IMG/VR virus record: IMGVR_UViG_3300028883_000032
Coordinates: 62,001 to 126,000 of that record
Length of the DNA: 64,000 bases
Strand: one strand, 5' to 3'
Positions 28,273-45,293 of this stretch are shown piece by piece (the stretch's first letter is position 1; every line of letters starts with the position of its first letter). The notes under the pieces were generated by a model that was given only the letters and a program-made list of their open reading frames with translations, was not told where the DNA came from and did not search any database. Position numbers and translations under genes: made by a program.

Positions 28273-28325
28273 TGCCTCCAGTTAAGTATAATAAGGGGCC
28301 CCGGCAGGGCCAAGGCCCCTAAAAG

Positions 28326-28652
28326 TTACTCAGCCTGTTCAGCAGCTTGTAGTAATTCTACAAAACGATCAAAATGGCCCTGGGCTACGATTTTACCGTA
28401 ATCATAGGCTTCTGCTATTTTTTCCTCATTTTCCTCGGCTTCAATTGCCTTGTTAATGAGTACTTCTGCTACCTTGACAACATCTTCTTCGGTATATTCT
28501 TCGATACCATCGTTACGAATCAATGCTTCCGCTTGTTTTGCAAACTCGGAAATGACTTCAAGACGTGCTTGGTCAAGTTCTGCTGTTTTTGTTTCTTCTT
28601 CTACTTCAGCAGGTTTAGCTTGCTTTGCCATAAATTGTTCAAATAGACCCAT
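28326..28652 (-). CDS. Putative scaffold protein, K-x-A rich
   Basis: Acidic helical; KQA, KPA, KTA, KQA, KVA, KIA. Confidence 0.55.
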   Translation of the reverse strand: MGLFEQFMAKQAKPAEVEEETKTAELDQARLEVISEFAKQAEALIRNDGIEEYTEEDVVKVAEVLINKAIEAEENEEKIAEAYDYGKIVAQGHFDRFVELLQAAEQAE

Positions 28653-31789: not shown

Positions 31790-33403
31790 TTATGAAATAT
31801 AACTTACTGGGGTTTCACACATTTCGCAAATAGCTGTAGCAAAAATAAGTGAATGTACTGTGTCATCTGGATCAGAATTAGTATATTGTAGTTTATTATG
31901 ATCTTCATCATAGTCTGCTACAATAGCCATTAAATCATCAGCAAATGGTGTTTTAAACTGATCGTAGTGTGGAAAAACATATTGTTTAGTTTTTACTCTA
32001 TGATAAAAATTAGAAATCGCCTTGTTACGATTTACCATCCAATGCATGGCCTTACCTTGCCACTTATAATCCTCTTTTAAAGTGGCAGAATGTAGATATT
32101 CTGTTACTGCGTAACGGCCAAGACGCCTGCGTAATTCTGCGTTGGAGGCTTCCCCCATGCCACGATCTGCCCCTATTCGTTCAACTTCCCACGCTTTGGC
32201 TATTTTTGGTATTTCGTCATGAATGTATTCAAAATTGGCGTATTTGCCTTCAAACCTACGTATATATTTAACAACAAACCTGTCGTATTCATCTCGTTGT
32301 ATGACACTAACCACGGTATAGCTGTTATCGCTGTTGGCGGGACCCCAGTCGATTCCCATGTAACTTGGTCTGGGTTTGTGTTTTAAAGTTATGGCTCCAG
32401 GTTGTCGGTAGTCTGGCATAATATACCCAGGATCACAAGCTGCCTTAATTTGTTCAGGGGTGATAAGAACAACACCATCATCGTACTCAAGACCAAGTAT
32501 TTCGTTATAAAAGGTTGCTCTTGACTCTGTTTCGTATTTATAAACAATGTCTTGCTCCCAATCAATCCATGGTGCCCCATAGAATTGCAGCTGAGATATC
32601 CTAAACCCTTCAACAAGATTTGCTCGAGATCGAGCAGACTGATTAGTGCTTATCCATGACCCAATTCGTGGATTAAGAATCTTCCCACAATACTTACATA
32701 TTAACGCGTGAAGTCCTATATTCTTTTCTGTTAGAATATTATGTTTTCCACAGTGTCCACACTCCACAGCCCACTCATTCATGGTGGAAGAAAACCACCA
32801 TTTCGCCAAGGTACCACGTTTTCTTTTAGGCGTGCCTGTATAATAATTCCATTTATACAAAGAACGGTGCATAGCTTGATTAATAATTTCTATGCTGTCT
32901 TGCAGAAGATCCTGAGCCTCATCGTAACAAATCATATCAGCAGAAAGGCCACGAAGTCTGTCAGGACTTTGTAACGCATAGCGCAAGTATATTTTTGCGC
33001 CATTTACAAGAGTTTTGTTAAATACGTTATTTTGTAAATTTCTATTCCACCAATACTTCTTTATAAGGGGAGACTCTTCAAGTATAGGCGTAAAGCGATC
33101 GTACGAAAATATTTTTGTTTGGTCGACTGACGGAGAAACATACACTGTACGAAATCCCATCGGTCTGGCATCTTTGCCGCCTCGTTCCCTTGGCAACAAG
33201 GCGCTATTAGCAAATATAATATTTGCTAGAGTTGTGCTTTTTACAACCTGTCGTGCTGTTTTTAATACTATGACATTCGCTGGGTCTATATTATATATAG
33301 GCCGCATATGTGGATAGGCATCCAAACTATACGGCATTCCATTCAAATAAACATACGATTCAACAAATTCACTTTTTGTAAAATTAAGCGGTGCGTTCTT
33401 CAT
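31790..33403 (-). CDS. Terminase large subunit (GpA-like ATPase plus RNase H-like nuclease)
   Basis: KTARQVVKST (Walker A variant), RGLSADMICYDEAQD (Walker B), YMGIDWG, IGADRGMG, PDDTVHSL. Confidence 0.9.
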   Translation of the reverse strand: MKNAPLNFTKSEFVESYVYLNGMPYSLDAYPHMRPIYNIDPANVIVLKTARQVVKSTTLANIIFANSALLPRERGGKDARPMGFRTVYVSPSVDQTKIFSYDRFTPILEESPLIKKYWWNRNLQNNVFNKTLVNGAKIYLRYALQSPDRLRGLSADMICYDEAQDLLQDSIEIINQAMHRSLYKWNYYTGTPKRKRGTLAKWWFSSTMNEWAVECGHCGKHNILTEKNIGLHALICKYCGKILNPRIGSWISTNQSARSRANLVEGFRISQLQFYGAPWIDWEQDIVYKYETESRATFYNEILGLEYDDGVVLITPEQIKAACDPGYIMPDYRQPGAITLKHKPRPSYMGIDWGPANSDNSYTVVSVIQRDEYDRFVVKYIRRFEGKYANFEYIHDEIPKIAKAWEVERIGADRGMGEASNAELRRRLGRYAVTEYLHSATLKEDYKWQGKAMHWMVNRNKAISNFYHRVKTKQYVFPHYDQFKTPFADDLMAIVADYDEDHNKLQYTNSDPDDTVHSLIFATAICEMCETPVSYIS

Positions 33404-34361
33404 CGCTCTTATCTTTTTTCTTAGCCTTAATAACAGCCTCTATTTCATCTAAGCCCATTCCAGAAACATCCTCCATAGTCCCACCACCCATTTCATTTGG
33501 GTCCGGGAGTTCAACTCCCAGCTCTTCCGCGCTTTTTATTGTTATCGAAGGATTAATGGTCTTAAGATTTATTTTTAGATCCGCATAAAGGTCTGTAGAA
33601 TCAGAATCGCTGTTTTCCATATCACGAATACGGTCATATGCTTTTAGCATAAGATCGCCCCACTTCTTCGATTGGTCAGGGTTGTATCTAGAATTTTCAT
33701 CAAAGTTGTAGAAAGACGTACGAAACAGTGATTCCAGCATAGACCCAAATGATCTGTCTGGAGTAAGGCCTAAATTATAGACAACAAAATCCTTGTCTTT
33801 TTTTAAGGCCATGGTATAAAGACGTTTCAAATCTTTGTTTTCTTCATGCTGTCTATAAATTTCTAACTCTTCATAACTCCAACTGAACACATTAAAAAAG
33901 TATTTAAAAAACAACATGAATATTTCGGTATCCCAAGCAGTGCCTTGTCGTCCATTTGCATAAAGCTCTATGTCGGCTTCATCAATACCAGCCATTGCCA
34001 TGGTTTGTAATTCTCTGCGAAGCCTTGGGTCATTCAGAGCTTTAAATACATCTCTATACACGTCTATCGGAAAATCATCTACCGTGAATAAGTTAGTATC
34101 AAATAGATATGCAAACATGTCCTTTACTTGTAATTCGTTAAGGATGTCAACATCTATTCTAAAATTATTTGGATCTTGGTTAAAATGCTCTGGATACAAA
34201 CGTGACAGTTGGCCACGTATTTGAGAGTAGGCATCACCTTGTATCAACGGTAAGGAGTATTCTTTTAGTCTGTCATTAACAGTCTTTTGTGACAGAAGAC
34301 GAAGAACAAGGACCTCACAAAACCGCCTATGCGGGATTAGGTAAATTGGGTTTACTGCCAT
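33384..34361 (-). CDS. hypothetical protein, possible terminase small subunit
   Basis: Overlaps TerL start; helical with acidic tail; positional inference only. Confidence 0.35.
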   Translation of the reverse strand: MAVNPIYLIPHRRFCEVLVLRLLSQKTVNDRLKEYSLPLIQGDAYSQIRGQLSRLYPEHFNQDPNNFRIDVDILNELQVKDMFAYLFDTNLFTVDDFPIDVYRDVFKALNDPRLRRELQTMAMAGIDEADIELYANGRQGTAWDTEIFMLFFKYFFNVFSWSYEELEIYRQHEENKDLKRLYTMALKKDKDFVVYNLGLTPDRSFGSMLESLFRTSFYNFDENSRYNPDQSKKWGDLMLKAYDRIRDMENSDSDSTDLYADLKINLKTINPSITIKSAEELGVELPDPNEMGGGTMEDVSGMGLDEIEAVIKAKKKDKSDEERTA

Positions 34362-34710
34362 CCTTTTTTTCCTTGCGTGTCAGATACATGGCCACCGGTG
34401 CCGAAGTGGCGCCGATGCCAATTAAAGCTAAATTGTTTATGTTTTTCATACTACGTAGTATTGGTTTCCAGTCTTCGGGATGAAGGCGTTTAAATTCGTC
34501 CAGTATGTCTTTTGGGATTAATTTGTGTCCCGCCAAGGACGTCGCTAACCCAACTGTACCTCCAGCCGCAGACACCGCCGAAGTATTCGGCGATTCCGAA
34601 TGCCCAGCAACCCAGCCAACTAGCGGCGCTCCCATTAACCCGTATGGGGCATATCTTGTGGACGCCTTTGCTAGTCTTGCAAATGATTTAAACTGTTCTG
34701 GGCTGCGCAT
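34327..34710 (-). CDS. Glycine-zipper putative virion protein
   Basis: GLMGAPLVGWVAG, AAGGTVGLAT, LALIGIGAT. Confidence 0.55.
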   Translation of the reverse strand: MRSPEQFKSFARLAKASTRYAPYGLMGAPLVGWVAGHSESPNTSAVSAAGGTVGLATSLAGHKLIPKDILDEFKRLHPEDWKPILRSMKNINNLALIGIGATSAPVAMYLTRKEKKDGSKPNLPNPA

Positions 34711-34713
34711 AGT

Positions 34714-35013
34714 TTAGTATCTTGGTGCATTTGGAATCATGTACGGTATCTTAGTGCTGGCTTTTTGTTTGTTTGGTAATAAAAAACTCAAAGCACCACC
34801 AACGGCCGCACCCGTCATTGTATCTTGCTGTAACAAATGAGCAGAGATGGCGCCCAGCATCGCGAATACCCCAGCACGCAACATTTTCTTAAACAAAGAG
34901 GGGTCCTTCGCTTTAAGTTCCTGAAGAAGCTGTCTCTGCTGTCCTTGAAGTTCCAGGTACTGGAGTGATTCCTGGTCTGTTATTGGCTGAACACTCAGTG
35001 GGTTTTGATTCAT
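34714..35013 (-). CDS. Glycine-zipper putative virion protein
   Basis: AGVFAMLGAISA, GAAVGGALSFLL. Confidence 0.55.
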   Translation of the reverse strand: MNQNPLSVQPITDQESLQYLELQGQQRQLLQELKAKDPSLFKKMLRAGVFAMLGAISAHLLQQDTMTGAAVGGALSFLLPNKQKASTKIPYMIPNAPRY

Positions 35014-35054
35014 TATATTTCCTACAACAATTACAAACGTTATATACTACTACT

Positions 35055-35846
35055 TTATTTTCCGGCTGTCCAAGAATTGTCTTCGGGGGTGTAAATGGCT
35101 CGAACGGACTCAGACAGTGTTCTATTCCGCATACTGGACAAACTATTTTCATATTTCTCCAACAGTAGTGACACCTCTTTTCTACGCTGGTTATCGGCGT
35201 GTGTCAGTTGAACCACCTTTACATAAGGTTCAGTATCTAAAAGGTTTGACCAATATTTCAAACCGTTTGTTACAGCTAACTGTGTTGGTAAATCACTTTG
35301 AGAACAATCCCCGGTTAAAGCAATTTGAGTATCATGCCCAAGACGAGTTAAAACCATTTTTACTTGAGGTATTGTAGCATTTTGTGCCTCGTCTAGGATA
35401 ACGTACGCATTTGTAAGCGAACGTCCCCTCATATATGCTATCGGGGATACTTCTAATTTAAAGCTGTCTCGTAATTCTCTTATTTTATCGTGTGTTAGAA
35501 GTATTTTTAGAGAATCATAAATTGGTCTCAAATACGGATCTATTTTATCTTCTAACGAACCGGGAAGAAATCCAAGACTTTCTCCTGCCTCGACAATTGG
35601 CCGAGTAATAACTATTCTATCGACGGAACCGTCGTATAAAGATTTTATTGCCGCATATGTGGCTAAGAGCGTTTTGCCCGTTCCAGCGGGACCGGTGCCA
35701 AACACTATTGGGAAATCAGGATTTAAAAGATCGTTTAAGTACTTATTTTGATTTTTTGTTTTGGGTTTAATTTGTTTCAAACAACTGCTTGCTACTATTG
35801 AGGAATTAGTACGCTCTCTGCGACGGCTAGGTATTTTCTGAGCCAT
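35055..35846 (-). CDS. phoH: PhoH-family ATPase
   Basis: GTGPAGTGKT, TRPIVEAGESLGFLPG, AYMRGRSL, ILDEAQN, TGDCSQSDL. Confidence 0.95.
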   Translation of the reverse strand: MAQKIPSRRRERTNSSIVASSCLKQIKPKTKNQNKYLNDLLNPDFPIVFGTGPAGTGKTLLATYAAIKSLYDGSVDRIVITRPIVEAGESLGFLPGSLEDKIDPYLRPIYDSLKILLTHDKIRELRDSFKLEVSPIAYMRGRSLTNAYVILDEAQNATIPQVKMVLTRLGHDTQIALTGDCSQSDLPTQLAVTNGLKYWSNLLDTEPYVKVVQLTHADNQRRKEVSLLLEKYENSLSSMRNRTLSESVRAIYTPEDNSWTAGK

Positions 35847-35854
35847 ATAGTGCT

Positions 35855-36475
35855 TTATGAAGTTCTCCTGGATTTGGAGTCAAATAATAAACTACCACCT
35901 AAACCAACTGCACTCGTTCCGAATATTGACGACGACAATGGGTTTTGCTCTATATATTTACCAACACGCTGTTTTATCCCACCGGGAGCTGCTCCTCTTT
36001 GTAAGTGTCTTCCCGCATTTTGGACTTTGCCAAGAATGCCTGGATGGCTTGTGGTTTTAACTGCTTTTCTCGCCGTTACTAAACCTTTAGCGATAACGCC
36101 GGCCGTTGCCAAACCAGAGGCCGCACCAACTACATTATTTATAGCAGAAGCGCCTCGATTGAGTTTTGATCCTAGGTTCTTAATGGCGTCTTTTGTACCC
36201 ATATCTACAAAATCAGGTCTGGGAGGAGGGGTGTGTTGGCCATAGCTACCATGCCATTTAACTCTTGCACCATAATCACTAATAGTTGAAAATGGGTTGT
36301 TTGCTTTTGCATGTATTGCTACATTTTTTGGCGCAGACTTGGCAGCTGTCCAAGCTCCTACCGCTTTATTTTTACCGCCTGTAACAATGTCTTTGCCAAT
36401 TTGAGTAAGGCCTACACCAAAATCACTGGTTATGGCTTTTCTCAAAGATTTTATAAATGCAGTCTTTTGCTCCAT
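35855..36475 (-). CDS. Basic Gly/Ala-rich putative virion protein
   Basis: QKTA N-terminus; GAASGLATAGVIA; GTSAVGLGGSLL. Confidence 0.55.
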   Translation of the reverse strand: MEQKTAFIKSLRKAITSDFGVGLTQIGKDIVTGGKNKAVGAWTAAKSAPKNVAIHAKANNPFSTISDYGARVKWHGSYGQHTPPPRPDFVDMGTKDAIKNLGSKLNRGASAINNVVGAASGLATAGVIAKGLVTARKAVKTTSHPGILGKVQNAGRHLQRGAAPGGIKQRVGKYIEQNPLSSSIFGTSAVGLGGSLLFDSKSRRTS

Positions 36476-36521
36476 TGCATCCTCTTTTATATAGAAGTTC
36501 TATTGTAATATACTTATTTTA

Positions 36522-37262
36522 CTAGGCAATGTCAAGTCTTAACTTAACTTCGTTTTTTATTACATCATTTACAGGAAAACCCCTTAGTCGATCTTCAACC
36601 CAATTTTTGAATGGGGTTTGTGCATATTGTCCTTGGGCCCTACCAGCACTATACCAATCCGCAATCGCTTCAAGGTTTGTATTTATATCCGTTGGTGAGG
36701 GGTGGTGGTGAGGATTACGTGATTTGTGCTGCGAAGTAGCTTGCCTAAAATCCGATACAACTTCAGGAGTTTTCTGCCCGAACCAATACCTACGATATGG
36801 TCCCCATTCTGAAGGAGTTAGTTTTGATAAATCATGCTTTAAAAGTTGTAGTCTAGGCACATCCAACTCCCGCCCAGCGCGGTATACATAATATTTGTGT
36901 TTAGTCAGGTACTTCGCATTGTTCCAGTTTTGTGAAAACCAATCCTTTAGGCCAGCCTCTTTTTTAATTCCCCCGGACCCCCTTGTATGGTTGGAGAAGT
37001 TGAAATTTTTGGGTTGCACGCGCAGCGTCGCGGACTTTTCTTCAAAAAATGGAGAAGTGTAAGTATGCTTCGTAATGGTTGGAGCAGTGGAATCCAAGGT
37101 ATCTAGAATACCACGAAAGAAGGGTTCGTTGGACGACGCTGTGCTAGTAGCGGGAACACTATCCGCGGAGCGGATCATGTTGCCTACATGGTCCCTCGAC
37201 TTGGTTGGGTCAAAAGAACCTTGCATAAAATACCCTACATCTTTAACGACTTTCTGAGACAC
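36522..37262 (-). CDS. DUF5662-like HD-domain protein with N-terminal leader
   Basis: TKHKYYV..LLKHDLSK..EWGPY..HKSRNPHH..ADW; domain follows KKEAG. Confidence 0.7.
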   Translation of the reverse strand: MSQKVVKDVGYFMQGSFDPTKSRDHVGNMIRSADSVPATSTASSNEPFFRGILDTLDSTAPTITKHTYTSPFFEEKSATLRVQPKNFNFSNHTRGSGGIKKEAGLKDWFSQNWNNAKYLTKHKYYVYRAGRELDVPRLQLLKHDLSKLTPSEWGPYRRYWFGQKTPEVVSDFRQATSQHKSRNPHHHPSPTDINTNLEAIADWYSAGRAQGQYAQTPFKNWVEDRLRGFPVNDVIKNEVKLRLDIA

Positions 37263-37276
37263 TGTTGTTGTTCTTT

Positions 37277-37855
37277 CTAAGATTGGAAGATTGATCTAGC
37301 GAACGATTTAGTACCAACTCTCCGAGCCATACGATACAAACCTGATTTTGGATGTTTGGACATGAATTTAGCAGCGGTAGTACCCGCGAAGCCTAGTGCC
37401 GATAAACCTAATCCCCACTTACCCCACCTTTTTGCCCCGCTTAAAATAGAATTCCACTTGTTATTCATAAAGCTCTTTGCGCCAAAGTAACCTCCGGCAG
37501 CAAGACCAGCGCCTCCTACCAGTGCTCCTCCAAGAGCCTTACCAAAACCACTTCCTGCCGTAGAACTAACATTTGGGGTAGGTGTGGGAGATCCCACAGA
37601 CGCGCCGACAGTATTATAGTTAAACTCCGCTACTTTTGGCGGATTGGGAATTTGGTATTTCCGTTTAAATGCAAGTGTTTTGGCAACATTTGGATCCTGA
37701 AAAAAGGCGGGAACATTAACGTCGCCACCTCCGGGATTTTTAGGAGATTCCTCTATTATGGGTTGTGGTTCCAACTCAACAACTTTGGATTCAACTGGAA
37801 GTATGTCTGGATCTATTTCTGATAGTTTAAAAAAAGAAGTCATTACATAGCCCAC
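37277..37855 (-). CDS. Glycine-zipper putative virion protein
   Basis: KVAE then GGALVGGAGLAAGG and WGLGLSALGFAG. Confidence 0.55.
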   Translation of the reverse strand: MGYVMTSFFKLSEIDPDILPVESKVVELEPQPIIEESPKNPGGGDVNVPAFFQDPNVAKTLAFKRKYQIPNPPKVAEFNYNTVGASVGSPTPTPNVSSTAGSGFGKALGGALVGGAGLAAGGYFGAKSFMNNKWNSILSGAKRWGKWGLGLSALGFAGTTAAKFMSKHPKSGLYRMARRVGTKSFARSIFQS

Positions 37856-38778
37856 CGTTTGTTTAGTTCCGGCATGAACATATTGTCTTTTGGCTTACCT
37901 AGCGATTTGCTGGGCACTCCCCAAAAATTTGAAAATGATTGTACCTTGGGAGTTCTTAACGGTTTCTGAAAAAACGCCTTGGATACTGTCAAGAATCCGG
38001 ATGTTTTTGATAAGCCTTGTTGGAAAGAGGTTAAACCGACCGTTGTGAGAGCAGTACCCAAAATAGCTTTACGTAAATTACCGCTGTGCATAGTATTCTT
38101 CAAACCTGCTTGTGCAGCTTGTAGGCCTTTAACGGTATTTTCATTAGTTTTACCAAGACCATACCCAAGTGCAGCCCCCGCTAAGTCCTTACCAACAGCT
38201 TTGGTTTTATAGGTCTTTAGAACCGGGGATAGTGAATTCGTTTTAGCTGATTCAATAATACTTGATTTTAAATTTTTTGGTATTAATGCATTAATAATGT
38301 TATTATGAATACTTGTTGAAGTATGTTTTACATCCCTTTTGGATCGTCTTAAAGTTTTTTCTAATTTCTTTGATAGAGATTTTAGGGCCTCGTCCTCTTT
38401 CGGGGCACTTAAAGCCCTATTAACAGTATTTACTCCTGTGGCGGCACCGACGAGACCGGCTCCAATTAATGCCGGATTTCGGTCCTCAGCAGTTTTCGTT
38501 GGATAAACTTTGACAGTACGGCTTAATGCTTTATCTATGGCTTTCCATTGAGCGGGCAAAGACTTACCTGCTCTCATCAACGTTGTTGCTGCACCAACAG
38601 CAAAAAGCGCGTTGTTTAGTTGGTGCAATTTACCTGCACGGCGCATAAGCTTTGTTGCAGACTCTGTCTGTTTTGCAAGCTGCTTATTTGTGTAAGCTTG
38701 GTTAGCAACCAGTCCCCCGCCTAAAGCGGCCATGGTGGCTAGCGCTGTAGTACTGCGATTGTTTTTACGCTCTGGCAT
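37843..38778 (-). CDS. Modular glycine-zipper putative virion protein
   Basis: Hydrophobic/basic modules separated by TKTAE and SKTSG. Confidence 0.55.
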   Translation of the reverse strand: MPERKNNRSTTALATMAALGGGLVANQAYTNKQLAKQTESATKLMRRAGKLHQLNNALFAVGAATTLMRAGKSLPAQWKAIDKALSRTVKVYPTKTAEDRNPALIGAGLVGAATGVNTVNRALSAPKEDEALKSLSKKLEKTLRRSKRDVKHTSTSIHNNIINALIPKNLKSSIIESAKTNSLSPVLKTYKTKAVGKDLAGAALGYGLGKTNENTVKGLQAAQAGLKNTMHSGNLRKAILGTALTTVGLTSFQQGLSKTSGFLTVSKAFFQKPLRTPKVQSFSNFWGVPSKSLGKPKDNMFMPELNKRWAM

Positions 38779-39796
38779 TTACTTTCCCATGAAAAATAGG
38801 TGGAGTTGATATGGAATGCAAGACAGCTCTACCAAGATTAGCCTTATCTATCTTCTTGTCTTTTGTAAGTATCTTTTCTCCTCTATCGAGGCCAATATCC
38901 CAATAATCTGTATATGTCATTGTTTTACGGTCTTTAGATATGGTACGGTAATAATCGCCTAAAGTTGAATGAGTTCCTAGGTGGCCACCGCTTCCCCTTG
39001 ATCCTGGGCCTATACGGCGACTAACGTTTGGTGTAAATACACCTTTATAGGAGTCTTTTTGTAGTTGATTGTGTTGATCTGTTCCCGGTTTGAAAGAGTA
39101 AGTGCCATCTTTGTTTTTCTGAATAAGCTTGTCAATAGTAGCTTTTGGCGCTACCGACTCTCTTGGCTTTAGCCCAAACATGCGCCGAGAAGCAAATTCT
39201 CTCACAGCCGCATCTTCATCAAGATGTTGTAAACTAGGTGCCCAATTTGGCTTATCCTTAATTACTGCTTCAACTGCACGCTTAAACCCCAAATCCTTGA
39301 TACTCTGCAACTTAAAGGTGGCATCATAGCCATAAGGTGATATTAAATTAGTTGTCACGCGACCTACAGCTTTTGGGCCCAATGTTCCTACAACTGCTCC
39401 GGTTACAGTACCTGTAATGGCGGCATCTCGTACGCGGCGTCTGTTAACTTTTTTTAGATCGCCAGTCAATGATTCAACACGCTTATCAGCAACATATTGG
39501 TCTATATTTGGTATGCGCTTCCCAAAAAATTTTACATCTTTTGGCCGATTAGCCTTTATATATTTTATCTGGCGCTTTATACCTTTAGCTTTGTTTGCAG
39601 TTAGAGCCAGAGAAGCTCCAGCCCCAAGAACACCTGGAACGGCATACTGGGCAGCACGGTGTGTAGCATTACGGGCTTTAATAGATGTAAGCATACTTTT
39701 CGCAGAGCGTGTTTCATCGCCTACGAGCTTAAGTTTACCTACTAAATCAGACGGTAGTATCATTCTAGTGTACTTTCTTTTGGGGTAAAAAAGCAA
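38765..39796 (-). CDS. Glycine-zipper protein with globular C-terminal domain
   Basis: GVLGAGASLA, GTVTGAVVG, then ISPYGY..HSTLGDY..YTDYWD..IFHGKV. Confidence 0.6.
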   Translation of the reverse strand: MLFYPKRKYTRMILPSDLVGKLKLVGDETRSAKSMLTSIKARNATHRAAQYAVPGVLGAGASLALTANKAKGIKRQIKYIKANRPKDVKFFGKRIPNIDQYVADKRVESLTGDLKKVNRRRVRDAAITGTVTGAVVGTLGPKAVGRVTTNLISPYGYDATFKLQSIKDLGFKRAVEAVIKDKPNWAPSLQHLDEDAAVREFASRRMFGLKPRESVAPKATIDKLIQKNKDGTYSFKPGTDQHNQLQKDSYKGVFTPNVSRRIGPGSRGSGGHLGTHSTLGDYYRTISKDRKTMTYTDYWDIGLDRGEKILTKDKKIDKANLGRAVLHSISTPPIFHGKVNARA

Positions 39797-39799
39797 GCA

Positions 39800-39964
39800 T
39801 CATTTAGAGATGCTTACTATCACCAAAGCCCCTGCTAGGGTTATAGTGACTATGGGCCAAGCGACACAAAACAAGTATACATTGACTTGCTGGTATGTCA
39901 TACCTGTGTGTTTTGAAACCCAATTCAAAGCATCAACACAGTTGTTAAAAGCTTTGTCTACCAT
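39800..39964 (-). CDS. Small membrane protein (54 aa, not in ORF track)
   Basis: GGAATAAGAT box and GGGAG SD; MVDKAFNNCVDALNWVSKHTGMTYQQVNVYLFCVAWPIVTITLAGALVIVSISK. Confidence 0.7.
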   Translation of the reverse strand: MVDKAFNNCVDALNWVSKHTGMTYQQVNVYLFCVAWPIVTITLAGALVIVSISK

Positions 39965-40131
39965 GATAGCATCTCCCGAGTTAGGTTATACTATCTTATT
40001 CCCTTATTCAACTTTAGTATTATTTCTTTTCCTTTTTACCCGAAGAGCGTTGAATGGTATTTTTTGTTTCATTAAAAACTCTTGTTCCTCGGGATTGGTC
40101 TATCGGTTTTGGCATAGATTCCTTCCCTGTT

Positions 40132-40395
40132 CTAAATATACGCACAGAGCGGGTCCATTGTCCAGTATTTTCTATCCTGCGGGTTATACTGTGTAAATAA
40201 AGAGAATGGTTTAGCTGCGGTCTTTTTAAACCCCCAACGCCTTAATGATTTAACTGGCGCACTTGTTGGTATTTCAGTGAGGGGCAGCCTCATGGCTTCC
40301 CTCATGTGATTTCCAGCAGATTCCCAATCACCGGCTGTTCTTGCCGCCTTGGCTTTTGTTATAAGTTCAGTAAACTTGGGGTTGAGATTTGGCAT
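40132..40395 (-). CDS. hypothetical protein
   Basis: ORF with KKTAA motif. Confidence 0.5.
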   Translation of the reverse strand: MPNLNPKFTELITKAKAARTAGDWESAGNHMREAMRLPLTEIPTSAPVKSLRRWGFKKTAAKPFSLFTQYNPQDRKYWTMDPLCAYI

Positions 40396-40432
40396 AAGAA
40401 GGTAATCCTTACAAACTTACCCGGGAGGTAAG

Positions 40433-40693
40433 ATGTTCATGTTAATTGTTATAAACCTGATTGCCGTTTTTGGCTTAGTCGGGGGCTTACTGTTGCTGGT
40501 AAAGCATGAAGGAGAAGCTGTGGGCATTAAACAATGCCTTTCTGAATTAAATAATAAGTATACTGCTTTGGCGCGATTAAACGAAATCGCTCGTAAGCGG
40601 AAAACTATTAACGGTGTTATCTGGTTAAGCGGCGGCGTCTACCTATTCTTTCTCTATCATTTCATATTGGTTGTGCATAATTATCTGGCATAA
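40433..40693 (+). CDS. Small island membrane protein
   Basis: GGCATAAGAA box at 40391, GGGAGG SD, two TM segments. Confidence 0.75.
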   Translation: MFMLIVINLIAVFGLVGGLLLLVKHEGEAVGIKQCLSELNNKYTALARLNEIARKRKTINGVIWLSGGVYLFFLYHFILVVHNYLA

Positions 40694-40701
40694 GAATATA
40701 T

Positions 40702-40897
40702 GGTGATCTCGGACCTAGTCTTATGCACCGATCGCGCCTCGTGCCTGTTTTCCTTGGACGGGCCCAGGTAAAAAGTCACCCCGTGTATAACCGCATGGTT
40801 AGCCAAATCGGTGTAAGACAATGATCCGTGTTACCACACTTTTGGCGCTCTCGACGTTTTGGCTACGGCCAATCTGTCGGTTGCGTCAAATTTTTTT
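40702..40897 (+). ncRNA. Structured ncRNA candidate
   Basis: 13-bp WC stem 40718-40732/40807-40819, outer GGTGA/TTACC, 3' hairpin with UACG tetraloop and T7. Confidence 0.55.
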
Positions 40898-41273
40898 AGC
40901 CCCTAGGAGACTGAAAATAAGGAGTACGCGACATAGTATTTGCGGCTGCTTGTATTGCCTCTGCTTGTGCCATTGCTTCACGGTGCTGACGCATGGTTTC
41001 CTGATGCTTCTGTAAAGCAGTTGCATGGCGAGCATCCTTACGAGCTAATTGGCGAGTTATCTCATTAATAGCCTTATATTTAGATAGGGCAGGGGCCATA
41101 CCCAATGTTGGTATTCCCGTCATTATTGGGTGTCTTAATGGAAGACGTTTGTTGTATTGCTGTGTAATCATCTGGCGCACAACAGGCTCATCTTCATCAC
41201 CAAAATACGTGCCAATATTATCTTCAACATCGGACATGTTGAGAGTACGCGCTTCTTTGAAAAATGGGATCAT
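40896..41273 (-). CDS. Putative virion protein
   Basis: FFKEART N-terminus, GIPTLGMAPAL. Confidence 0.55.
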   Translation of the reverse strand: MIPFFKEARTLNMSDVEDNIGTYFGDEDEPVVRQMITQQYNKRLPLRHPIMTGIPTLGMAPALSKYKAINEITRQLARKDARHATALQKHQETMRQHREAMAQAEAIQAAANTMSRTPYFQSPRG

Positions 41274-41329
41274 TAGTCCTTCCTTATTTACATATTTGCG
41301 GGGTTAAATTTGGAATAAGATAGTAACAT

Positions 41330-41498
41330 TAAGGCCTATGTCCTGTGAGCACAGGATGAAATCTCTAAAGACGGATTTAATCTCCGTCGGTGGCGCCCCA
41401 ACCAAATGAGTCAACCAAACGGATTGAACATTTGGACATCGGGAGGATAGAGGGCCGAGATTATTTGCTCCGGGTGTAGCGCCAGCACCTGTTTTTTT
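41330..41498 (+). ncRNA. Multi-hairpin ncRNA candidate
   Basis: After GGAATAAGAT; hairpins TCCTGTG/CACAGGA, GACGGA/TCCGTC, CCAAATG/CATTTGG; T tract; only very short ORFs. Confidence 0.4.
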
Positions 41499-41543
41499 GG
41501 TATAAGAAATTACATGTTCACATTTAACGTTAAAGGGAAAACT

Positions 41544-41990
41544 ATGTCTCAACAAGTTAAAATTGCTTTATTTAGTTTGGTACCATTGACCCTTCTTACT
41601 GCTATTATTGTGTTTACAAGTATTAGCAACCTGTGGCTGTGGTATGTCATTTTGTCTCTGGCATCAGTGGCCTATTTTGTTTACAATTACAAGAACGATA
41701 TGGTATCTCAAATTATATTGCCAAAAATTAGTAACAGCACACGATGGATATTCAGTTCGGTTCAAACAATTAGCATGCTATTTATAATGGCATCATCTCC
41801 ATTTAGCTGGTTGCTGCTATTAGGTCTTTTCATTTTTATGTGGACTTTAGTGCTGTCTGCAACCACTATATACCTACACGCTTTGACGGAACTCTACAAA
41901 CTGTCTCAAAACCCTGAATCCCAAGCGGAAGAGCTTGAAAAGTTTGTGGAAGCCTTCCGGCTCGATTTCCTTTTAAAAAGGAATTTTTAG
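41544..41990 (+). CDS. Island multi-pass membrane protein
   Basis: GGTATAAGAA box at 41499; four hydrophobic segments. Confidence 0.75.
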   Translation: MSQQVKIALFSLVPLTLLTAIIVFTSISNLWLWYVILSLASVAYFVYNYKNDMVSQIILPKISNSTRWIFSSVQTISMLFIMASSPFSWLLLLGLFIFMWTLVLSATTIYLHALTELYKLSQNPESQAEELEKFVEAFRLDFLLKRNF

Positions 41991-42088
41991 TATCATGGGC
42001 CGGGTAACTGGCCTATTTTTTAGCCTAAAAATGGTATAAGATAATATAGGATGTTACTATATCCTTGCGGGCCATTTCCCTAGTCGGC

Positions 42089-42209
42089 TTACCCAGTTGA
42101 CTGTTCGCGAGAGCAGCGATGCGCGCTGCGAAGCATCCAAAGGTGCTAAAAAGCACGGACTTGTGCACAAGTCCATGGGTAAACAACCGTTGATGCTACG
42201 GTTGTTTTT
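42089..42209 (+). ncRNA. Multi-way-junction ncRNA candidate
   Basis: Closing TTACCCA/TGGGTAA, GCGA tetraloop hairpin, GTGCT-AAAA-AGCAC, 18-bp palindrome GGACTTGTGCACAAGTCC, terminator. Confidence 0.55.
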
Positions 42210-42651
42210 AGTCCAAATAAACATGAGCTGGGTCACCATTTTTATCCCAAACTTTGGGATCCTTCATTAATTGACTTATCAGTTTCGGAGCACCTTTGAC
42301 ACGTGCACGTATGAAAGCACTACCGTCGCCATCAACACTCAGTTTTAATTCCCTTGACGACCCTGAAGAACAACACCAATTGATGTGCCCTAAATGTTTT
42401 AACAGATTAATAATATTACCCTTACCACCGATTATTTCTACGGTGATCTTTGTATCCGTTTGATTAAACCCAAATTTTTTTAACACTTTGCCTACGTCGG
42501 CCCAAGTTGTAGCAGTAGTATCCACAGGCTTAAAAGCTCTAGCTATATCATTTGGACTAGTAGTTAACTTTCCTAAAATGTAACCATGTGTTTTTAACTT
42601 CTGCGAAGTTGTCATTTTAGGTATTGCTTCTATTAATCTGTCTGGTGACAT
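42208..42651 (-). CDS. hypothetical protein
   Basis: ORF in - strand operon. Confidence 0.6.
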   Translation of the reverse strand: MSPDRLIEAIPKMTTSQKLKTHGYILGKLTTSPNDIARAFKPVDTTATTWADVGKVLKKFGFNQTDTKITVEIIGGKGNIINLLKHLGHINWCCSSGSSRELKLSVDGDGSAFIRARVKGAPKLISQLMKDPKVWDKNGDPAHVYLD

Positions 42652-42659
42652 CTTTTATC

Positions 42660-43109
42660 TTACTGTGAGTTTGATTTTAGGCCTATTGTTGCTAAAGCAC
42701 CAAGTCCTAATACAGGAGCAATAGTGTTTAATTGTCCTCTGGCGGCAATCATTTTTTTTATGCCTGCCAAGCGTTTTGTGGATGCCAAGTCACCTACAAA
42801 AGCTCCAGCTATACCCCCACCCATAAGCCCGTGTAATGGCGGTTCATTACGTATTAAGCTGGTATTTCCTCCAATAACAGCTCCTAATCCGGCGCCTACT
42901 GATCTTCTATTATTTACTACTTTTAGATCAGACCGTATTTCTTTTGCAAGTTGATTAGATCTTAATGCCGCTCCGGTCGCCCCTGCTGCTAGTCCTAGAC
43001 CGGTACCTGTCATAATTCTATCTTTCTTCTTTAATATCTTCCCCAAACGCTTTGTCTCCCCTTCAGAGGGATCGGCGTAGGCACCTACTTTAAAAAATGG
43101 TACTTTCAT
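42660..43109 (-). CDS. Glycine-zipper putative virion protein
   Basis: GTGLGLAAGATG, GAGLGAVIGG, GGGIAGAFVG, VLGLGALATIG. Confidence 0.6.
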   Translation of the reverse strand: MKVPFFKVGAYADPSEGETKRLGKILKKKDRIMTGTGLGLAAGATGAALRSNQLAKEIRSDLKVVNNRRSVGAGLGAVIGGNTSLIRNEPPLHGLMGGGIAGAFVGDLASTKRLAGIKKMIAARGQLNTIAPVLGLGALATIGLKSNSQ

Positions 43110-43287
43110 GTTTACACACCGTTGTATAAAATTATATAAGACCTTTTCAAAAATATAAAAAAATTATAAAATTTCGATGGGTCCCTAGGGCAGCTCTTAA
43201 AGGTACGTTCCTACTATGTGGTAAGATACGGTTAGAGATACCGGTATGGGTTTCTGACAAGTTGTTGGTTTGCAGTAAGCATGCTTT

Positions 43288-43488
43288 TTAAAAAAAAGTT
43301 GGTTTGTGTCTTTCGTCCTTAAGATTAACACTTTCCACATAAGGAGGAACCTCAATCTTAACGCCTGTACTACCAAACCCCAAACTACTTAATTTTATTG
43401 GGGTTAGGGAATCATTGGCATTCACAACAGCACCTAATGTATACGCATTATATGCATCATAATCTCTAATACTATTGTTTACGTACAT
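43288..43488 (-). CDS. hypothetical protein
   Basis: Follows previous gene; ends at a T8 run. Confidence 0.45.
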   Translation of the reverse strand: MYVNNSIRDYDAYNAYTLGAVVNANDSLTPIKLSSLGFGSTGVKIEVPPYVESVNLKDERHKPTFF

Positions 43489-43490
43489 GT

Positions 43491-43868
43491 TTACCTCGGT
43501 CTGTAGTAACTACTACGCTGATAGCGTCTATTGGCAGCAAAGCCCAATGCACCCATACCACCTACACCAATACCTACACCTAACCCAATCTTTCCCCAAT
43601 TACTTGGTTTGGGCATAGATGTGGCCCCTTTGGCAGCATTTTGTACATCATTCACTGTTGTTACGAATTTCTTACCAAGTCTGCCTGCACGATCAATGGC
43701 CCCTTCTGGATTACGCCACAATCCACCTATTGCATTACGTAGTTTAAGGCCAGCAGCCTCTCCGCTGCCTATTCCACCGAATAAAGTCTTAAAAAAGCCC
43801 CCTACGTGTTCACCTGCTGCTGCGGGCATTTTTAAAGCTGTTTTTTCAAATCCTGCTTCTTTTAACAT
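43491..43868 (-). CDS. Glycine-zipper putative virion protein (start at MLKEAG)
   Basis: GGAG SD; KEAG, EKTA; C-terminal GLGVGIGVGGMGALG plus basic tail. Confidence 0.6.
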   Translation of the reverse strand: MLKEAGFEKTALKMPAAAGEHVGGFFKTLFGGIGSGEAAGLKLRNAIGGLWRNPEGAIDRAGRLGKKFVTTVNDVQNAAKGATSMPKPSNWGKIGLGVGIGVGGMGALGFAANRRYQRSSYYRPR

Positions 43869-43896
43869 GTTGTTTTCTCCATATATGGCATAAGAA

Positions 43897-44010
43897 TGTG
43901 TTAAGTTGCCGAGTACAAATTCCCGAGTAACCGGCATATTCCTGAAAATACTCTCACCAACTCCTTTTGGGGTTGGATTGTGTTCTTCTCCTGGAATATG
44001 TCGGTTTTTA
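43897..44010 (+). ncRNA. Short hairpin RNA candidate
   Basis: After GGCATAAGAA; 12-bp stem 43931-43942/43993-44004 enclosing CCAACTCC-TTTT-GGGGTTGG; T tract. Confidence 0.35.
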
Positions 44011-44068
44011 GCCCAATTTGCGGGTGTTTTAGGGGAATAAGATAGTGTGAGAGTAGTTTAATACCATT

Positions 44069-44485
44069 ATGTACAAGGAGAAGAACATGAGTTTGTTTCG
44101 GAAGACCGCGCCCCCGCCTTCAAGGTGGGAAAAAGTAAGAGTCGGAACAATTGACACCGTGAAGACCCATGGCCCGGGTGCCGCAATCGGAGCGGCAACC
44201 ACACTAGGACTGGTATTGGCTGTAAAATTCAAGAACCGGATCAAGGGTACTCCCTACAATCTACCCGAAAACCGTCTCGAATTGTTCCCGGAGGGTAAAA
44301 TCCGAGACCTCGTGGAGTATTGCGCGAGGCCGGATGTTCAGGACTGGCCAGATGAAGTCTGGCTCCGGTTGAGCGACGGTCACGCCAACTTCAATAAAAT
44401 GAAGGGGATCTGTCGCGATCTCTTCGGTGATCGTACCGTGGATTCATACCTGGAAGCTCAAAAAACCGCGGAAGTTCCGAAGTAG
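44069..44485 (+). CDS. Island protein with one hydrophobic helix (likely start 44087)
   Basis: GGAATAAGAT box, AAGGAG SD, downstream terminator about 44500-44537. Confidence 0.75.
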   Translation: MYKEKNMSLFRKTAPPPSRWEKVRVGTIDTVKTHGPGAAIGAATTLGLVLAVKFKNRIKGTPYNLPENRLELFPEGKIRDLVEYCARPDVQDWPDEVWLRLSDGHANFNKMKGICRDLFGDRTVDSYLEAQKTAEVPK

Positions 44486-44669
44486 TTGTGTGTCGAGCAA
44501 AAGTGGGTTAGTGCTTATGTGCTAACCTGCTTTTTTAGCCCAACCCACAACTTTTTTTGCCACTCTATAGGAACCACGATTCAACCACATAACTTTGCTT
44601 GCGACCCCAGGGAATAATGCAGCTCTCAACTACTTATTATTCAGGAATTTGCTTGTCAATGAACTATGG

Positions 44670-45293
44670 CTACAGTAATTTTGTCTTTAAATTATTGATA
44701 ATGCTTCGTAATTTATCCATTCTATGAGCTTTTGCAATCCGCTCTGCTTTTGTAGGTCCTAAAGCTAATGCCGCGAGCATTCCCACAAAAGCACCTTTTT
44801 CAGGTTTTCCACCATCATCTTTAAGATAGTATCCAGTGAGAGCACCCGCGCCTGCCCCAATTCCCAGCCGTTGAGCTAAACTAGCAAATTTAGTAGGAAA
44901 TTTACCTAAATCTTCTAACCCTTTTTTACCAACAGTAGACGGTAACGAGGGCTTACCAACAACTTTCGCTCCTTGTCTAGATATTGCCGCAGCATGTGCT
45001 ATTCCTCCCCCAGGAGGCGTTAACCATGCTACTGCGGCATTTTCTACAGCATTTAGTGGCCAAGCATGACGTGTGCCGTATACGTATCTAGCCCTCTCAC
45101 CTAAATTACTACTAGCTGCAGCTGTTAGTATGTTACTTTTTGATCTAACAGCACTAACCATCTCCTTAATAGGCATGGCAGTAGCTAAATTAGGAGTATC
45201 CTTTAGAATTTTAGTGATTCTCGACGTTGAAAACCCCAATTTAGTTAAATTAGGCATCAAGGACCTCAATATAATAGTTCTTTTTATTATCAT
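44670..45293 (-). CDS. Glycine-zipper putative virion protein
   Basis: TKFAS then LGIGAGAGALTG, GAFVGMLAALALG. Confidence 0.55.
   Translation of the reverse strand: MIIKRTIILRSLMPNLTKLGFSTSRITKILKDTPNLATAMPIKEMVSAVRSKSNILTAAASSNLGERARYVYGTRHAWPLNAVENAAVAWLTPPGGGIAHAAAISRQGAKVVGKPSLPSTVGKKGLEDLGKFPTKFASLAQRLGIGAGAGALTGYYLKDDGGKPEKGAFVGMLAALALGPTKAERIAKAHRMDKLRSIINNLKTKLL

What the first reader, a model, noticed from the sequence alone, without database searches (positions are those of the whole stretch)
34327..45293. Expanded family of basic glycine-zipper proteins: candidate ejected membrane-channel or vesicle components
Seen: at least ten late-strand proteins (34327, 34714, 35855, 37277, 37843, 38765, 42660, 43491, 44670, also 14451 and 30154) combine GxxxG hydrophobic helices with Lys/Arg-rich segments, usually released after a K-x-A site; 37843-38778 looks like a polyprotein of such modules. 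Established: glycine zippers mediate membrane helix oligomerisation; ejection proteins and jumbo-phage early infection vesicles rely on injected head cargo. Inference: packaged cargo that builds a trans-envelope conduit or membrane compartment on entry.
Basis: inference. Interest (0 to 1): 0.6.

Follow-up and report, generated by a model that had tools for sequence, protein, structure and literature searches.

The report
Tagged basic glycine-zipper phage head cargo
An uncultivated 207-kb phage carries, next to its head-assembly genes, a block of fast-evolving, very basic, glycine-rich small proteins that appear to be address-labelled and trimmed by the head protease for packaging inside the capsid; whether they later act on the host membrane is still unproven.

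Summary
The compositional observation is real. In a 206,856-bp viral genome, 7 of the 11 genes that are both basic and Gly/Ala-rich lie in 34.3-45.3 kb (p 3e-7). Uncharged small-xxx-small "zipper" segments are about 7-fold denser there than elsewhere. The proteins are not a demonstrable family: they show no pairwise similarity, and one has no relative among 1.84 billion representatives. The "polyprotein" reading of 37843-38778 is unsupported.

The K-x-A idea holds up better than expected. K-x-A is invariant in the major capsid protein and the head protease of eight related genomes, and is over-represented in the scaffold-like proteins. In relatives it ends a genome-specific N-terminal tag carried by many unrelated basic proteins, including glycine-zipper proteins, a helicase and DUF5662.

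The best reading is a T4-like capsid-targeting and propeptide system that loads diverse internal head proteins. The membrane-conduit function is untested. The zipper segments fail a standard transmembrane hydrophobicity test. However, one tagged member outside the window is a single mitochondrial-carrier repeat that is modelled as a trimer.

Verdict: a new variant of a known kind, of moderate to high interest.

The parts
34327..34710 (-). 127-aa basic protein (pI 10.0) with zipper segments; no clear N-proximal K-x-A
34714..35013 (-). 99-aa basic protein with two zipper segments; its N-terminal part has a 225-aa homologue (L003 3748-4425) in the same position in a relative
35855..36475 (-). 206-aa protein, pI 10.7, net +21; K-T-A at residues 4-6; zipper segments at about 117-130 and 187-195
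36522..37262 (-). 246-aa DUF5662 protein with a roughly 100-aa N-terminal extension ending in K-E-A just before the domain; not a zipper protein, but probably cargo of the same system
37277..37855 (-). 192-aa protein (probable start at residue 5 = 37843). An acidic roughly 70-aa N-terminal part begins with an F-F-K tag and ends at K-V-A (residue 74-76); a basic Gly-rich zipper part follows
37843..38778 (-). 311-aa protein, pI 10.7, net +35, three to four zipper segments, one K-T-A at residue 95; the polyprotein reading is unsupported
38765..39796 (-). 343-aa protein (called as 332 aa), pI 10.3, net +36, zipper segments in the N-terminal half; only itself found in the word search
40896..41273 (-). 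125-aa basic protein without zipper segments. Its N-terminal tag ends in K-E-A; the orthologue in L005 has K-I-A at the same position
42660..43109 (-). 149-aa protein, pI 10.9, 16% Gly, four zipper segments. N-terminal F-F-K-V-G tag. No relative in the exhaustive search
43491..43937 (-). 148-aa ORF; probable start at Met24 (43868; GGAG 8 nt upstream). This gives a tag of the M-L-x-x-x-G-F-x-K-T-A type. C-terminal G-x-G-x-G zipper, the most hydrophobic of the set
44670..45293 (-). 207-aa protein, pI 10.6, net +21, three zipper segments; tag-like L-T-K-L-G-F after Met13
14451..15080 (-). 209-aa basic zipper protein beside the sheath gene; N-terminal Y-F-x-x-E-K-E-A
30154..30780 (-). 208-aa protein conserved between the TerL-proximal gene and the protease in every relative. 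It has an N-proximal K-x-A, one hydrophobic Gly/Ala segment and a conserved C-terminal domain
29349..30152 (-). Head maturation protease. Invariant K41-x-A43 and K229 flank the ordered core
26366..27343 (-). Major capsid protein with invariant K24-x-A26 in eight genomes
27820..29251 (-). Three acidic scaffold-like ORFs (27820-28272, 28326-28652, 28652-29251) with 6-7 K-x-A each, against 1.3-2.1 expected
30783..31775 (-). Conserved acidic 330-aa head-module protein with 11 K-x-A (3.7 expected)
46736..48562 (-). 608-aa protein at the upstream edge of the block; 11 K-x-A (4.1 expected), the first at residue 18; function unknown
31790..33403 (-). Large terminase (GpA-type), the anchor used to find relatives

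Best explanation
The block 34.3-45.3 kb, together with 14451, 30154 and 46736, encodes internal head proteins.

Proposed mechanism:
1. Each protein is made with a short N-terminal address peptide, or a longer propeptide, that ends in K-x-A. In this genome the ending is sometimes K-x-G.
2. The peptide takes the protein into the assembling prohead.
3. The assemblin/HK97-type head protease (29349-30152) cuts after the small residue. It does the same to the capsid protein, to itself and to the scaffold-like proteins.
4. The mature products are small, strongly basic and poorly conserved. They stay with the packaged DNA, where their Lys/Arg offset phosphate charge, and they leave with the DNA at infection.
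5. The glycine-zipper segments are most simply helix-helix packing motifs of proteins that must be soluble in the capsid and pass the tail unfolded. They may also let some members enter the host membrane after ejection.

Shown here: composition, clustering, motif conservation, and tags in relatives. Inferred: targeting, cleavage, presence in virions, ejection.
For: Context: the block lies on the head-gene strand directly upstream of TerL, the protease and the MCP.

K-x-A as a processing site:
- K24 and A26 of the MCP are invariant in 8 genomes.
- K41 and A43 of the protease are invariant, and a second K-x-A/G follows the protease domain. The AF2 model is ordered only between these two sites.
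- K-x-A is enriched against shuffles in the acidic scaffold-like ORFs.
- The protease model matches herpesvirus assemblins and T4 gp21 best and hits a PHROG head protease family. From established knowledge, assemblins cut (V/L/I)-x-A|S and T4 gp21 cuts (L/I)-x-E|, the same P3-x-P1 layout.

Tags:
- In TerL-anchored relatives, 11 of 32 genes (L006) and 9 of 23 genes (L005) have K-x-A in the first 13 residues.
- Those genomes share tags of the MKYFEKxA or ML-x-E-L-G-F-x-K-x-A type.
- Codons vary synonymously and the upstream DNA is not conserved.
- The DNA pattern is multi-copy and one-stranded in clade genomes: 9, 8 and 6 copies, none in the controls.

The tag follows the genome, not the protein family:
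- DUF5662 orthologues carry K-x-A immediately before the domain after 0, about 60 or about 100 extra residues.
- The carrier-like protein has one dialect in G000 and the other in G002.
- The helicase is tagged in L006 and L022 but not in the window.

Other support: 72% of N-proximally K-x-A-marked proteins in relatives have pI >= 9, against 40% of the others, and every one of the MKYF-tagged ORFs that is long enough to judge has pI >= 9.4. Every relative with upstream sequence has 2-4 basic zipper ORFs near TerL. Literature precedent: T4 internal proteins are diverse and share only a capsid targeting sequence (PMC3012670); SPN3US head proteins lose N-terminal propeptides at A-x-E (PMC10052503).
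Against: - There are no proteomic or structural data: the phage is a metagenomic record.
- In the window's own genome the tag is degenerate. ORFs 34327, 34714, 37843 and 38765 have no convincing N-proximal site, and positional enrichment of K-x-A in G000 as a whole is weak.
- K-x-A counts in the candidates are not above chance, so a single site in a K- and A-rich protein proves little.
- Loci L010-L022 were retrieved with the tag pattern itself and are biased. Only L003-L009 are unbiased.
- The protease fold match is weak (E 4e-3, TM about 0.3).
- The portal was not identified.
- The AF2 model of 42660 is unusable (pLDDT 50).
Confidence: 0.6

Rival explanations
1. One reading: after ejection the glycine-zipper proteins oligomerise in the host envelope and form a channel, a conduit or a membrane compartment for the incoming DNA. 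This is compatible with the packaging mechanism above but makes membrane action the main function.
For: - Zipper segments of 17-20 uncharged residues are flanked by Lys/Arg.
- There are sub-threshold resemblances to glycine-zipper and other membrane families, in the window and in relatives.
- A tagged 107-aa protein of the same genome is a bona fide single mitochondrial-carrier repeat (Pfam E 4.7e-9) and is conserved in G002.
- That protein is modelled as a trimer: score 0.77 against a best control of 0.00. The mark was reached by 21 of 30 solved pairs and 0 of 23 single chains. Contacts agree at least 78% and pLDDT is at least 77. The calibration used dimers only, and the pass may reflect memory of the carrier fold.
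- Podophage ejection proteins set the precedent of capsid-stored proteins that insert into membranes (PMC8954989, listed).
Against: - None of the window's candidates reaches the transmembrane range on the Hessa scale (+2.9 to +8 kcal/mol).
- No Pfam glycine-zipper model scores above 7.5 bits, against cut-offs of 25-29.
- There is no homology to known ejection proteins.
- This is a contractile-tail phage, whose tube and tape measure normally provide the conduit.
- In the low-confidence AF2 model the Gly-rich stretches are coil and the basic linkers are helices.
Confidence: 0.22
2. The proteins are not virion components. They are made in the infected cell as small membrane-associated or nucleoid-binding factors (exclusion, lysis timing, host takeover), and their position beside the head genes is incidental.
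For: - Two true membrane proteins on the opposite strand interrupt the block (40433-40693 and 41514-41990).
- PhoH and a LigD_N-like gene also sit in the block.
- ORFans that evolve this fast are typical of host-interaction genes.
Against: - They share a strand with, and are tightly packed among, the head genes.
- The shared N-terminal peptides end in the same motif that is invariant in the MCP and the protease.
- A separate amidase-plus-TM-protein set, taken for the lysis cassette, lies elsewhere in the genome.
Confidence: 0.1
3. There is no system. The block is a run of unrelated low-complexity ORFans, and the N-terminal similarities and K-x-A sites in this genome are chance in Lys/Ala-rich sequence.
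For: - No pairwise homology.
- K-x-A counts are at or below expectation.
- The tag is degenerate in G000.
Against: - The clustering has p 3e-7 and the zipper excess has Poisson p 1e-12.
- The frames are supported by codon usage.
- Relatives show the same class of genes with unmistakable multi-copy tags and strand bias against reversed-pattern controls.
- Orthologues keep the site position while the propeptide length changes.
Confidence: 0.05

Closest known systems
T4 internal proteins (IPI, IPII, IPIII, Alt) with their capsid targeting sequence
   Same: Diverse, mostly basic, fast-evolving proteins that share only a short N-terminal peptide. The peptide ends at the prohead protease site, loads them into the scaffold core and is then removed. 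The proteins are embedded in the DNA and injected with it (PMC3012670).
   Different: No sequence relation. The motif is K-x-A rather than L/I-x-E. Each genome of this clade has its own tag dialect. The cargo includes glycine-zipper proteins, an SNF2 helicase, DUF5662, HExxH proteins and a carrier-like repeat. Nothing here is shown experimentally.
Propeptide-bearing head and ejection proteins of SPN3US/phiKZ-like giant phages
   Same: A large myovirus with many head proteins whose N-terminal propeptides are cut at a three-residue motif that is also multiplied in scaffold-like proteins (PMC10052503).
   Different: Those phages use A-x-E and a T4-like head lineage. TerL here is GpA-type and its nearest cultured relative is at 28% identity. 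No inner-body homologues were found.
Herpesvirus assemblin and HK97 gp4-type maturation proteases
   Same: Best fold matches of the protease model. From established knowledge, assemblins cut after Ala in (V/L/I)-x-A|S, the same P3-x-P1(Ala) geometry as K-x-A.
   Different: P3 would be Lys. The match is weak (TM about 0.3). The phage enzyme has a Cys-rich insert.
Podophage ejection proteins (T7 gp14-16, P22 gp7/16/20) and the phiX174 H pilot protein
   Same: Capsid-stored proteins that refold into an envelope-spanning conduit. From my own knowledge, H uses glycine-zipper-like transmembrane helices.
   Different: No homology. The candidates are far smaller and less hydrophobic. The phage has a contractile tail.
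Glycine-zipper membrane domains (Pfam Gly-zipper_YMGG, Gly-zipper_Omp, glycine zipper 2TM)
   Same: G-x-x-x-G-x-x-x-G spacing in short uncharged stretches. Weak look-alike by language-model features (rank 14; scores 0.78 and 0.77).
   Different: HMM scores are noise. The candidates have no lipobox or signal peptide and are much more basic.

Membership tests
CTS-type packaged internal head proteins (T4 paradigm) | Otherwise unrelated proteins share a short N-terminal peptide | tested here: met
   Clear in relatives. Degenerate but present in the window for 37277, 40896, 42660, 43491, 44670 and 14451.
CTS-type packaged internal head proteins (T4 paradigm) | The peptide ends at the motif used by the prohead protease on capsid and scaffold proteins | tested here: met
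   K-x-A is invariant in the MCP and the protease, enriched in scaffold-like ORFs, and ends the tags. This is inference from sequence only.
CTS-type packaged internal head proteins (T4 paradigm) | Processed protein present inside virions and injected | not testable with these tools
   Needs virion mass spectrometry of a cultivated clade member.
CTS-type packaged internal head proteins (T4 paradigm) | Sequence homology to T4 IPs or their CTS | tested here: not met
   No PHROG or Pfam match. So this works like the T4 system but is not a member by descent.
One paralogous gene family ('expanded family') | Detectable similarity between members | tested here: not met
   All-against-all BLASTP and phmmer give nothing significant. 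ORF 42660 has no relatives in 1.84 billion representatives; the only hits were LRR noise.
Pfam glycine-zipper membrane domains | HMM score above the gathering cut-off | tested here: not met
   Best scores are 7.5 bits (cut-off 28.9) and 6.8 bits (cut-off 25).
Pfam glycine-zipper membrane domains | Small-xxx-small periodicity in uncharged stretches | tested here: met
   26 segments against 6.1 +/- 2.2 in shuffles.
Integral membrane proteins | At least one segment with predicted insertion free energy near or below zero | tested here: not met
   Best 19-mers are +2.9 to +8.0 kcal/mol; true TM proteins of the genome are -9.7 to -0.4. This used a simple summed scale, not a full predictor.
Assemblin / HK97 gp4 / T4 gp21 prohead proteases (for 29349-30152) | Family HMM match and fold | tested here: inconclusive
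   PHROG head protease family at E 3e-8. Foldseek top hits are assemblins and gp21, but at E 4e-3 to 8e-2 and TM 0.26-0.34. Catalytic residues were not mapped.
Mitochondrial carrier family (for G000 168820-169143, outside the window) | Mito_carr repeat above cut-off with the P-x-[DE] and G-x-x-P-K motifs | tested here: met
   36.3 bits against a cut-off of 22.3. The alignment to repeat 3 of a GTP/GDP carrier is. The G002 orthologue scores 25.5 bits.
Mitochondrial carrier family (for G000 168820-169143, outside the window) | Three tandem repeats in one chain | tested here: not met
   Single repeat of 107 aa. The genome holds no other match. The trimer model passes its controls.

The most novel reading that the evidence does not exclude
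A clade of uncultivated large myophages uses genome-specific N-terminal labels ending in K-x-A to load the capsid with proteins that become membrane proteins only after ejection. These would include glycine-zipper oligomers and a single-repeat, homotrimeric carrier-like pore. The head cargo, and not only the tail, would then build a transport structure in the host inner membrane at the start of infection.
Probability: 0.15. Interest if true: 0.85.

Novelty: new variant of a known kind. Interest (0 to 1): 0.6.

Why it matters
If the tag and K-x-A rule hold, the packaged and injected proteome of a whole clade of uncultivated large phages could be read from sequence alone. The readable set already includes enzymes: an SNF2 helicase, DUF5662 and HExxH proteins.

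The system would also offer a second, independent capsid-targeting system next to T4's for loading foreign proteins into heads. The fact that orthologues switch tag dialect with the genome suggests co-evolution of the label with a receptor in the prohead core, which can be tested directly.

The glycine-zipper class and the single carrier repeat are candidates for the poorly understood step by which myophage DNA crosses the inner membrane. The carrier repeat also bears on how three-repeat carriers arose.

Tried and rejected
Searches that found nothing useful:
- Megablast of the block against phage records: no match.
- PHROGs and Pfam on all candidates: nothing significant.
- TerL as a single query in IMG/VR: no close relative.
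- Salmonella phage Arash, the best cultured TerL hit at 28%, has a different layout and was dropped.
- Word search with 38765 returned only itself.
- The exhaustive search with 42660 returned itself plus five borderline hits. All five are leucine-rich-repeat proteins, so they are noise.
- PDB sequence searches for 46736, 30783 and the protease were empty.
- PHROGs on the 627-aa ORF at G000 166410-168293 and its neighbours did not identify the portal.

Analyses that led nowhere:
- ESM Atlas look-alikes are unnamed viral clusters, with scores under 0.9, so they are leads only.
- The AF2 single-sequence model of 42660 has pLDDT 50, so no fold search was run on it.
- Self-BLAST for internal repeats in 37843, 42660, 38765, 44670 and 37277 found none.
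- An upstream k-mer search for a late promoter shared by the block gave no clear motif.

Ideas considered and rejected:
- Signal peptides: the tags have no hydrophobic core.
- Double-glycine bacteriocin leaders: the proteins are too large and no transporter gene is nearby.
- A DNA-level regulatory repeat: codons vary synonymously and the upstream DNA is not conserved.

The sequencing-run and read-laying tools were not used.

Full report
WHAT THE WINDOW IS

The window is bases 62,001-126,000 of a 206,856-bp IMG/VR virus record, judged complete. The minus strand between about 11.5 and 48.6 kb carries structural genes:
- tail sheath, 12844-14427;
- major capsid protein (MCP), 26366-27343;
- head maturation protease, 29349-30152;
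- GpA-type large terminase (TerL), 31790-33403.

The nearest cultured TerL is Salmonella phage Arash at 28% identity. Metagenomes hold over 130 TerL relatives (E <= 1e-20; the 120 best listed range from 31 to 57% identity), some on contigs of up to 186 kb. This is therefore a member of an uncultivated clade of large myophages.

THE OBSERVATION

Each has its best codon-usage score in the annotated frame.

The proteins have pI 9.6-10.9, net charge +4 to +36 and 16-29% Gly+Ala. Only 11 of 306 genes in the genome combine pI >= 9.5 with G+A >= 18%, and 7 of them lie in 34.3-45.3 kb (p 3e-7). Almost every gene of that block is basic (median pI 9.95, against 6.4 genome-wide).

Uncharged small-xxx-small-xxx-small stretches with at least two Gly are about 7-fold denser in the block than elsewhere. 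In the candidates there are 26, against 6.1 +/- 2.2 after shuffling. The composition claim is therefore confirmed and is more than chance.

Three parts of the description do not hold:
- The proteins are not a demonstrable family. All-against-all BLASTP and phmmer give nothing. ORF 38765 finds only itself in the word search. ORF 42660 has no relative among 1.84 billion representatives; its five borderline hits are leucine-rich-repeat proteins.
- ORF 37843-38778 has one K-x-A against 4.5 expected and no internal repeat, so 'polyprotein' is unsupported.
- The 'hydrophobic helices' are only weakly hydrophobic. The best 19-residue windows sum to +2.9 to +8.0 kcal/mol on the Hessa scale. The genome's 13 clear membrane proteins score -9.7 to -0.4 and are all other genes.

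THE K-x-A MOTIF

I fetched seven loci around TerL relatives (L003-L009). The head module is conserved in them.

- In the MCP, K24 and A26 are invariant in all eight genomes.
- In the protease, K41 and A43 are invariant. A second site directly follows the protease domain: K-V/L-A-S/E in seven genomes and K-I-G-S in the window.
- An AlphaFold model built on that alignment is ordered only between these two sites, at residues 45-230.
- Its best fold matches, though weak, are herpesvirus assemblins and T4 gp21.
- From established knowledge, this superfamily reads a P3-x-P1 pattern: (V/L/I)-x-A|S for assemblins, L/I-x-E| for gp21, and A-x-E| for SPN3US gp245 (PMC10052503). K-x-A| fits that layout.
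- Genome-wide, K-x-A is most over-represented against shuffles in the acidic scaffold-like ORFs 27820, 28326, 28652 and 30783, in ORF 46736, and in a 373-aa acidic ORF outside the window. This is what is expected of proteins that are degraded during maturation.

THE N-TERMINAL TAGS

In the relatives, many mutually unrelated genes start with the same peptide.
- In L006 it is of the MKYFEKxA type. It sits on at least eight ORFs: three consecutive basic glycine-zipper proteins, an SNF2 helicase, a DUF5662 protein and small HExxH proteins.
- In L005 it is M-L-x-E-L-G-F-x-K-x-A, on six or seven ORFs.
- L009 has MKYF(T/I)KTA twice.
- The codons differ synonymously and the upstream DNA is not conserved, so selection acts on the peptide.

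A DNA pattern for the first tag finds 13 stretches in all of IMG/VR. It is multi-copy only in clade genomes. A looser pattern gives 9, 8 and 6 copies in three such records, all on one strand, with none for the reversed-pattern control. One contig (L022) has eight consecutive tagged genes, again including the helicase.

Proteins in relatives with N-proximal K-x-A are mostly basic: 72% have pI >= 9, against 40% of the rest. That figure includes loci that were retrieved by the tag itself. In the unbiased TerL-anchored set, the bin for residues 6-10 holds 23 K-x-A. The bin for residues 21-25, where the MCP site lies, holds as many. Most other bins hold 6-12, and two hold 16-18.

THE TAG FOLLOWS THE GENOME, NOT THE PROTEIN FAMILY

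- DUF5662 orthologues have K-x-A immediately before the conserved domain. It comes after no extension in L006, after about 60 residues in L018 and after about 100 residues in the window's 36522-37262.
- ORF 40896 and its L005 orthologue keep K-x-A-R at the same place under different leading residues.
- A carrier-like protein (described below) starts with the M-L-x-x-L-G-F type in this genome and with the MKYF type in G002.

This is the behaviour of an address label that co-evolves with a receptor in the prohead. [quoted passage not shown]

In the window's own genome the label is degenerate. Sites I consider credible:
- ORFs 37277 (from Met5), 40896 and 42660 begin x-F-F-K.
- ORF 43491, from Met24 with a GGAG 8 nt upstream, begins with the M-L-x-x-x-G-F-x-K-T-A type.
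- ORF 44670, from Met13, has L-T-K-L-G-F.
- ORF 14451 has Y-F-x-x-E-K-E-A.
- ORFs 30154 and 35855 have K-x-A within the first ten residues.
- ORF 37277 has an acidic roughly 70-residue leader ending in K-V-A before its basic zipper part.

ORFs 34327, 34714, 37843 and 38765 show no convincing N-proximal site.

MOST LIKELY MECHANISM

The block encodes internal head proteins that are targeted by the N-terminal peptide, trimmed by the head protease, stored with the DNA and ejected with it (confidence 0.6).

The basic charge suits life inside a DNA-filled capsid; in T4, lysines of the internal proteins contact DNA phosphates. The rapid divergence matches the T4 precedent. All steps after 'motif and tag exist' are inference.

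THE MEMBRANE QUESTION

Against the membrane reading:
- hydrophobicity is below the transmembrane range;
- Pfam glycine-zipper scores are at noise level;
- there is no homology to known ejection proteins;
- the phage has a contractile tail;
- the one model I could make is of low confidence and puts the Gly-rich stretches in coil.

For the membrane reading:
- the zipper stretches are 17-20 uncharged residues flanked by Lys/Arg;
- several relatives' members give sub-threshold hits to membrane families;
- there is one clear case outside the window.

That case is G000 168820-169143, a tagged 107-aa basic protein. It matches Pfam Mito_carr at 36.3 bits (E 4.7e-9) over nearly the whole profile, and it aligns with the signature motifs of repeat 3 of a solved GTP/GDP carrier. 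An orthologue in the same gene neighbourhood exists in G002.

Three copies are modelled as a complex with score 0.77, against a best control of 0.00. That mark was reached by 21 of 30 solved pairs and 0 of 23 single chains. Contacts agree at least 78% between runs and pLDDT is at least 77. The calibration used two copies only, and the pass may reflect memory of the carrier fold.

This shows that the labelled set can include descendants of membrane proteins. It does not show that the window's proteins insert into membranes. I put the conduit or channel reading at about 0.2. The vesicle idea is lower; it was not tested.

COMPARISON AND NOVELTY

Functionally the system works like the T4 CTS/internal-protein system and like the propeptide-bearing head proteins of SPN3US. 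It is not a member of either by descent. The cleavage motif, the tags and the cargo classes are new, and the per-genome tag dialects have, to my knowledge, not been described. I rate it a new variant of a known kind.

LIMITS

- Everything rests on sequence comparison of metagenomic records.
- Part of the locus set (L010-L022) was retrieved with the tag pattern.
- The portal was not identified.
- TM prediction used a simple scale.
- The read-mapping tools were not used.

Noticed in passing
G000:C1:168820-169143 (minus strand; L023:2821-3144; outside the window): A 107-aa tagged basic protein that is a single mitochondrial-carrier repeat (Pfam Mito_carr, 36.3 bits). It has an orthologue in the same gene order in a related 169-kb phage record (L024 1489-1794). 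Three copies are modelled as a trimer (0.77 against a best control of 0.00). A one-repeat carrier in phages seems unusual.
   Followed up: partly
L006:12373-13728 and L022:1503-2855: The SNF2-family helicase, orthologous to window 18632-19981, carries the N-terminal tag in two relatives but not in the window. This suggests that some clade members package a helicase.
   Followed up: partly
L020:8953-9363, L020:10715-11203, L018 (minus strand, starts at reverse-complement position 8824): Small (136-163 aa) tagged basic proteins with an H-E-x-x-H motif, possibly packaged metallopeptidases. No counterpart was recognised in the window.
   Followed up: no
window 36522-37262 and 46096-46569: Two DUF5662 paralogues. 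One has a roughly 100-aa leader ending in K-E-A (probable cargo). The other has no leader (probably cytoplasmic). The function of DUF5662 is unknown.
   Followed up: partly
window 40433-40693 and 41514-41990 (plus strand): Two strongly hydrophobic membrane proteins (about 2 and 4 predicted TM segments) are encoded on the opposite strand in the middle of the block, like an inserted cassette. Their function is unknown.
   Followed up: no
window 44069-44485 (plus strand): A 138-aa ORF whose Met7 opens M-S-L-F-R-K-T-A, followed by a Gly/Ala hydrophobic stretch. It is tag-like but lies on the other strand, and its codon-usage support is ambiguous.
   Followed up: partly
window 29349-30152 and homologues: The protease is 257-267 aa in the window and in L003. 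In five other relatives it is fused to a 230-370-aa C-terminal extension, and the junction is the conserved K-x-A site. The core contains a conserved Cys-x-x-Cys ... Cys-x-His insert.
   Followed up: partly
L005:12330-14426: The homologue of window 30783-31775 is 698 aa in this relative. It has a repetitive basic Ala/Gly-rich C-terminal extension that ends in a glycine-zipper stretch, so the zipper theme can also be fused to a core head-module protein.
   Followed up: no
window 12844-14427: The tail sheath begins with a tag-like Y-V-Q-K-T-A at residues 11-17. This may be coincidence; sheath homologues were not compared.
   Followed up: no
L009:9739-9924: A relative encodes a ribosomal protein S21 homologue directly upstream of TerL.
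   Followed up: no
G000:C1:170249-172486 (outside the window): An amidase-type endolysin followed by small TM proteins, taken for the lysis cassette. It lies next to the carrier-like gene and a K-x-A-rich acidic 373-aa ORF.
   Followed up: partly
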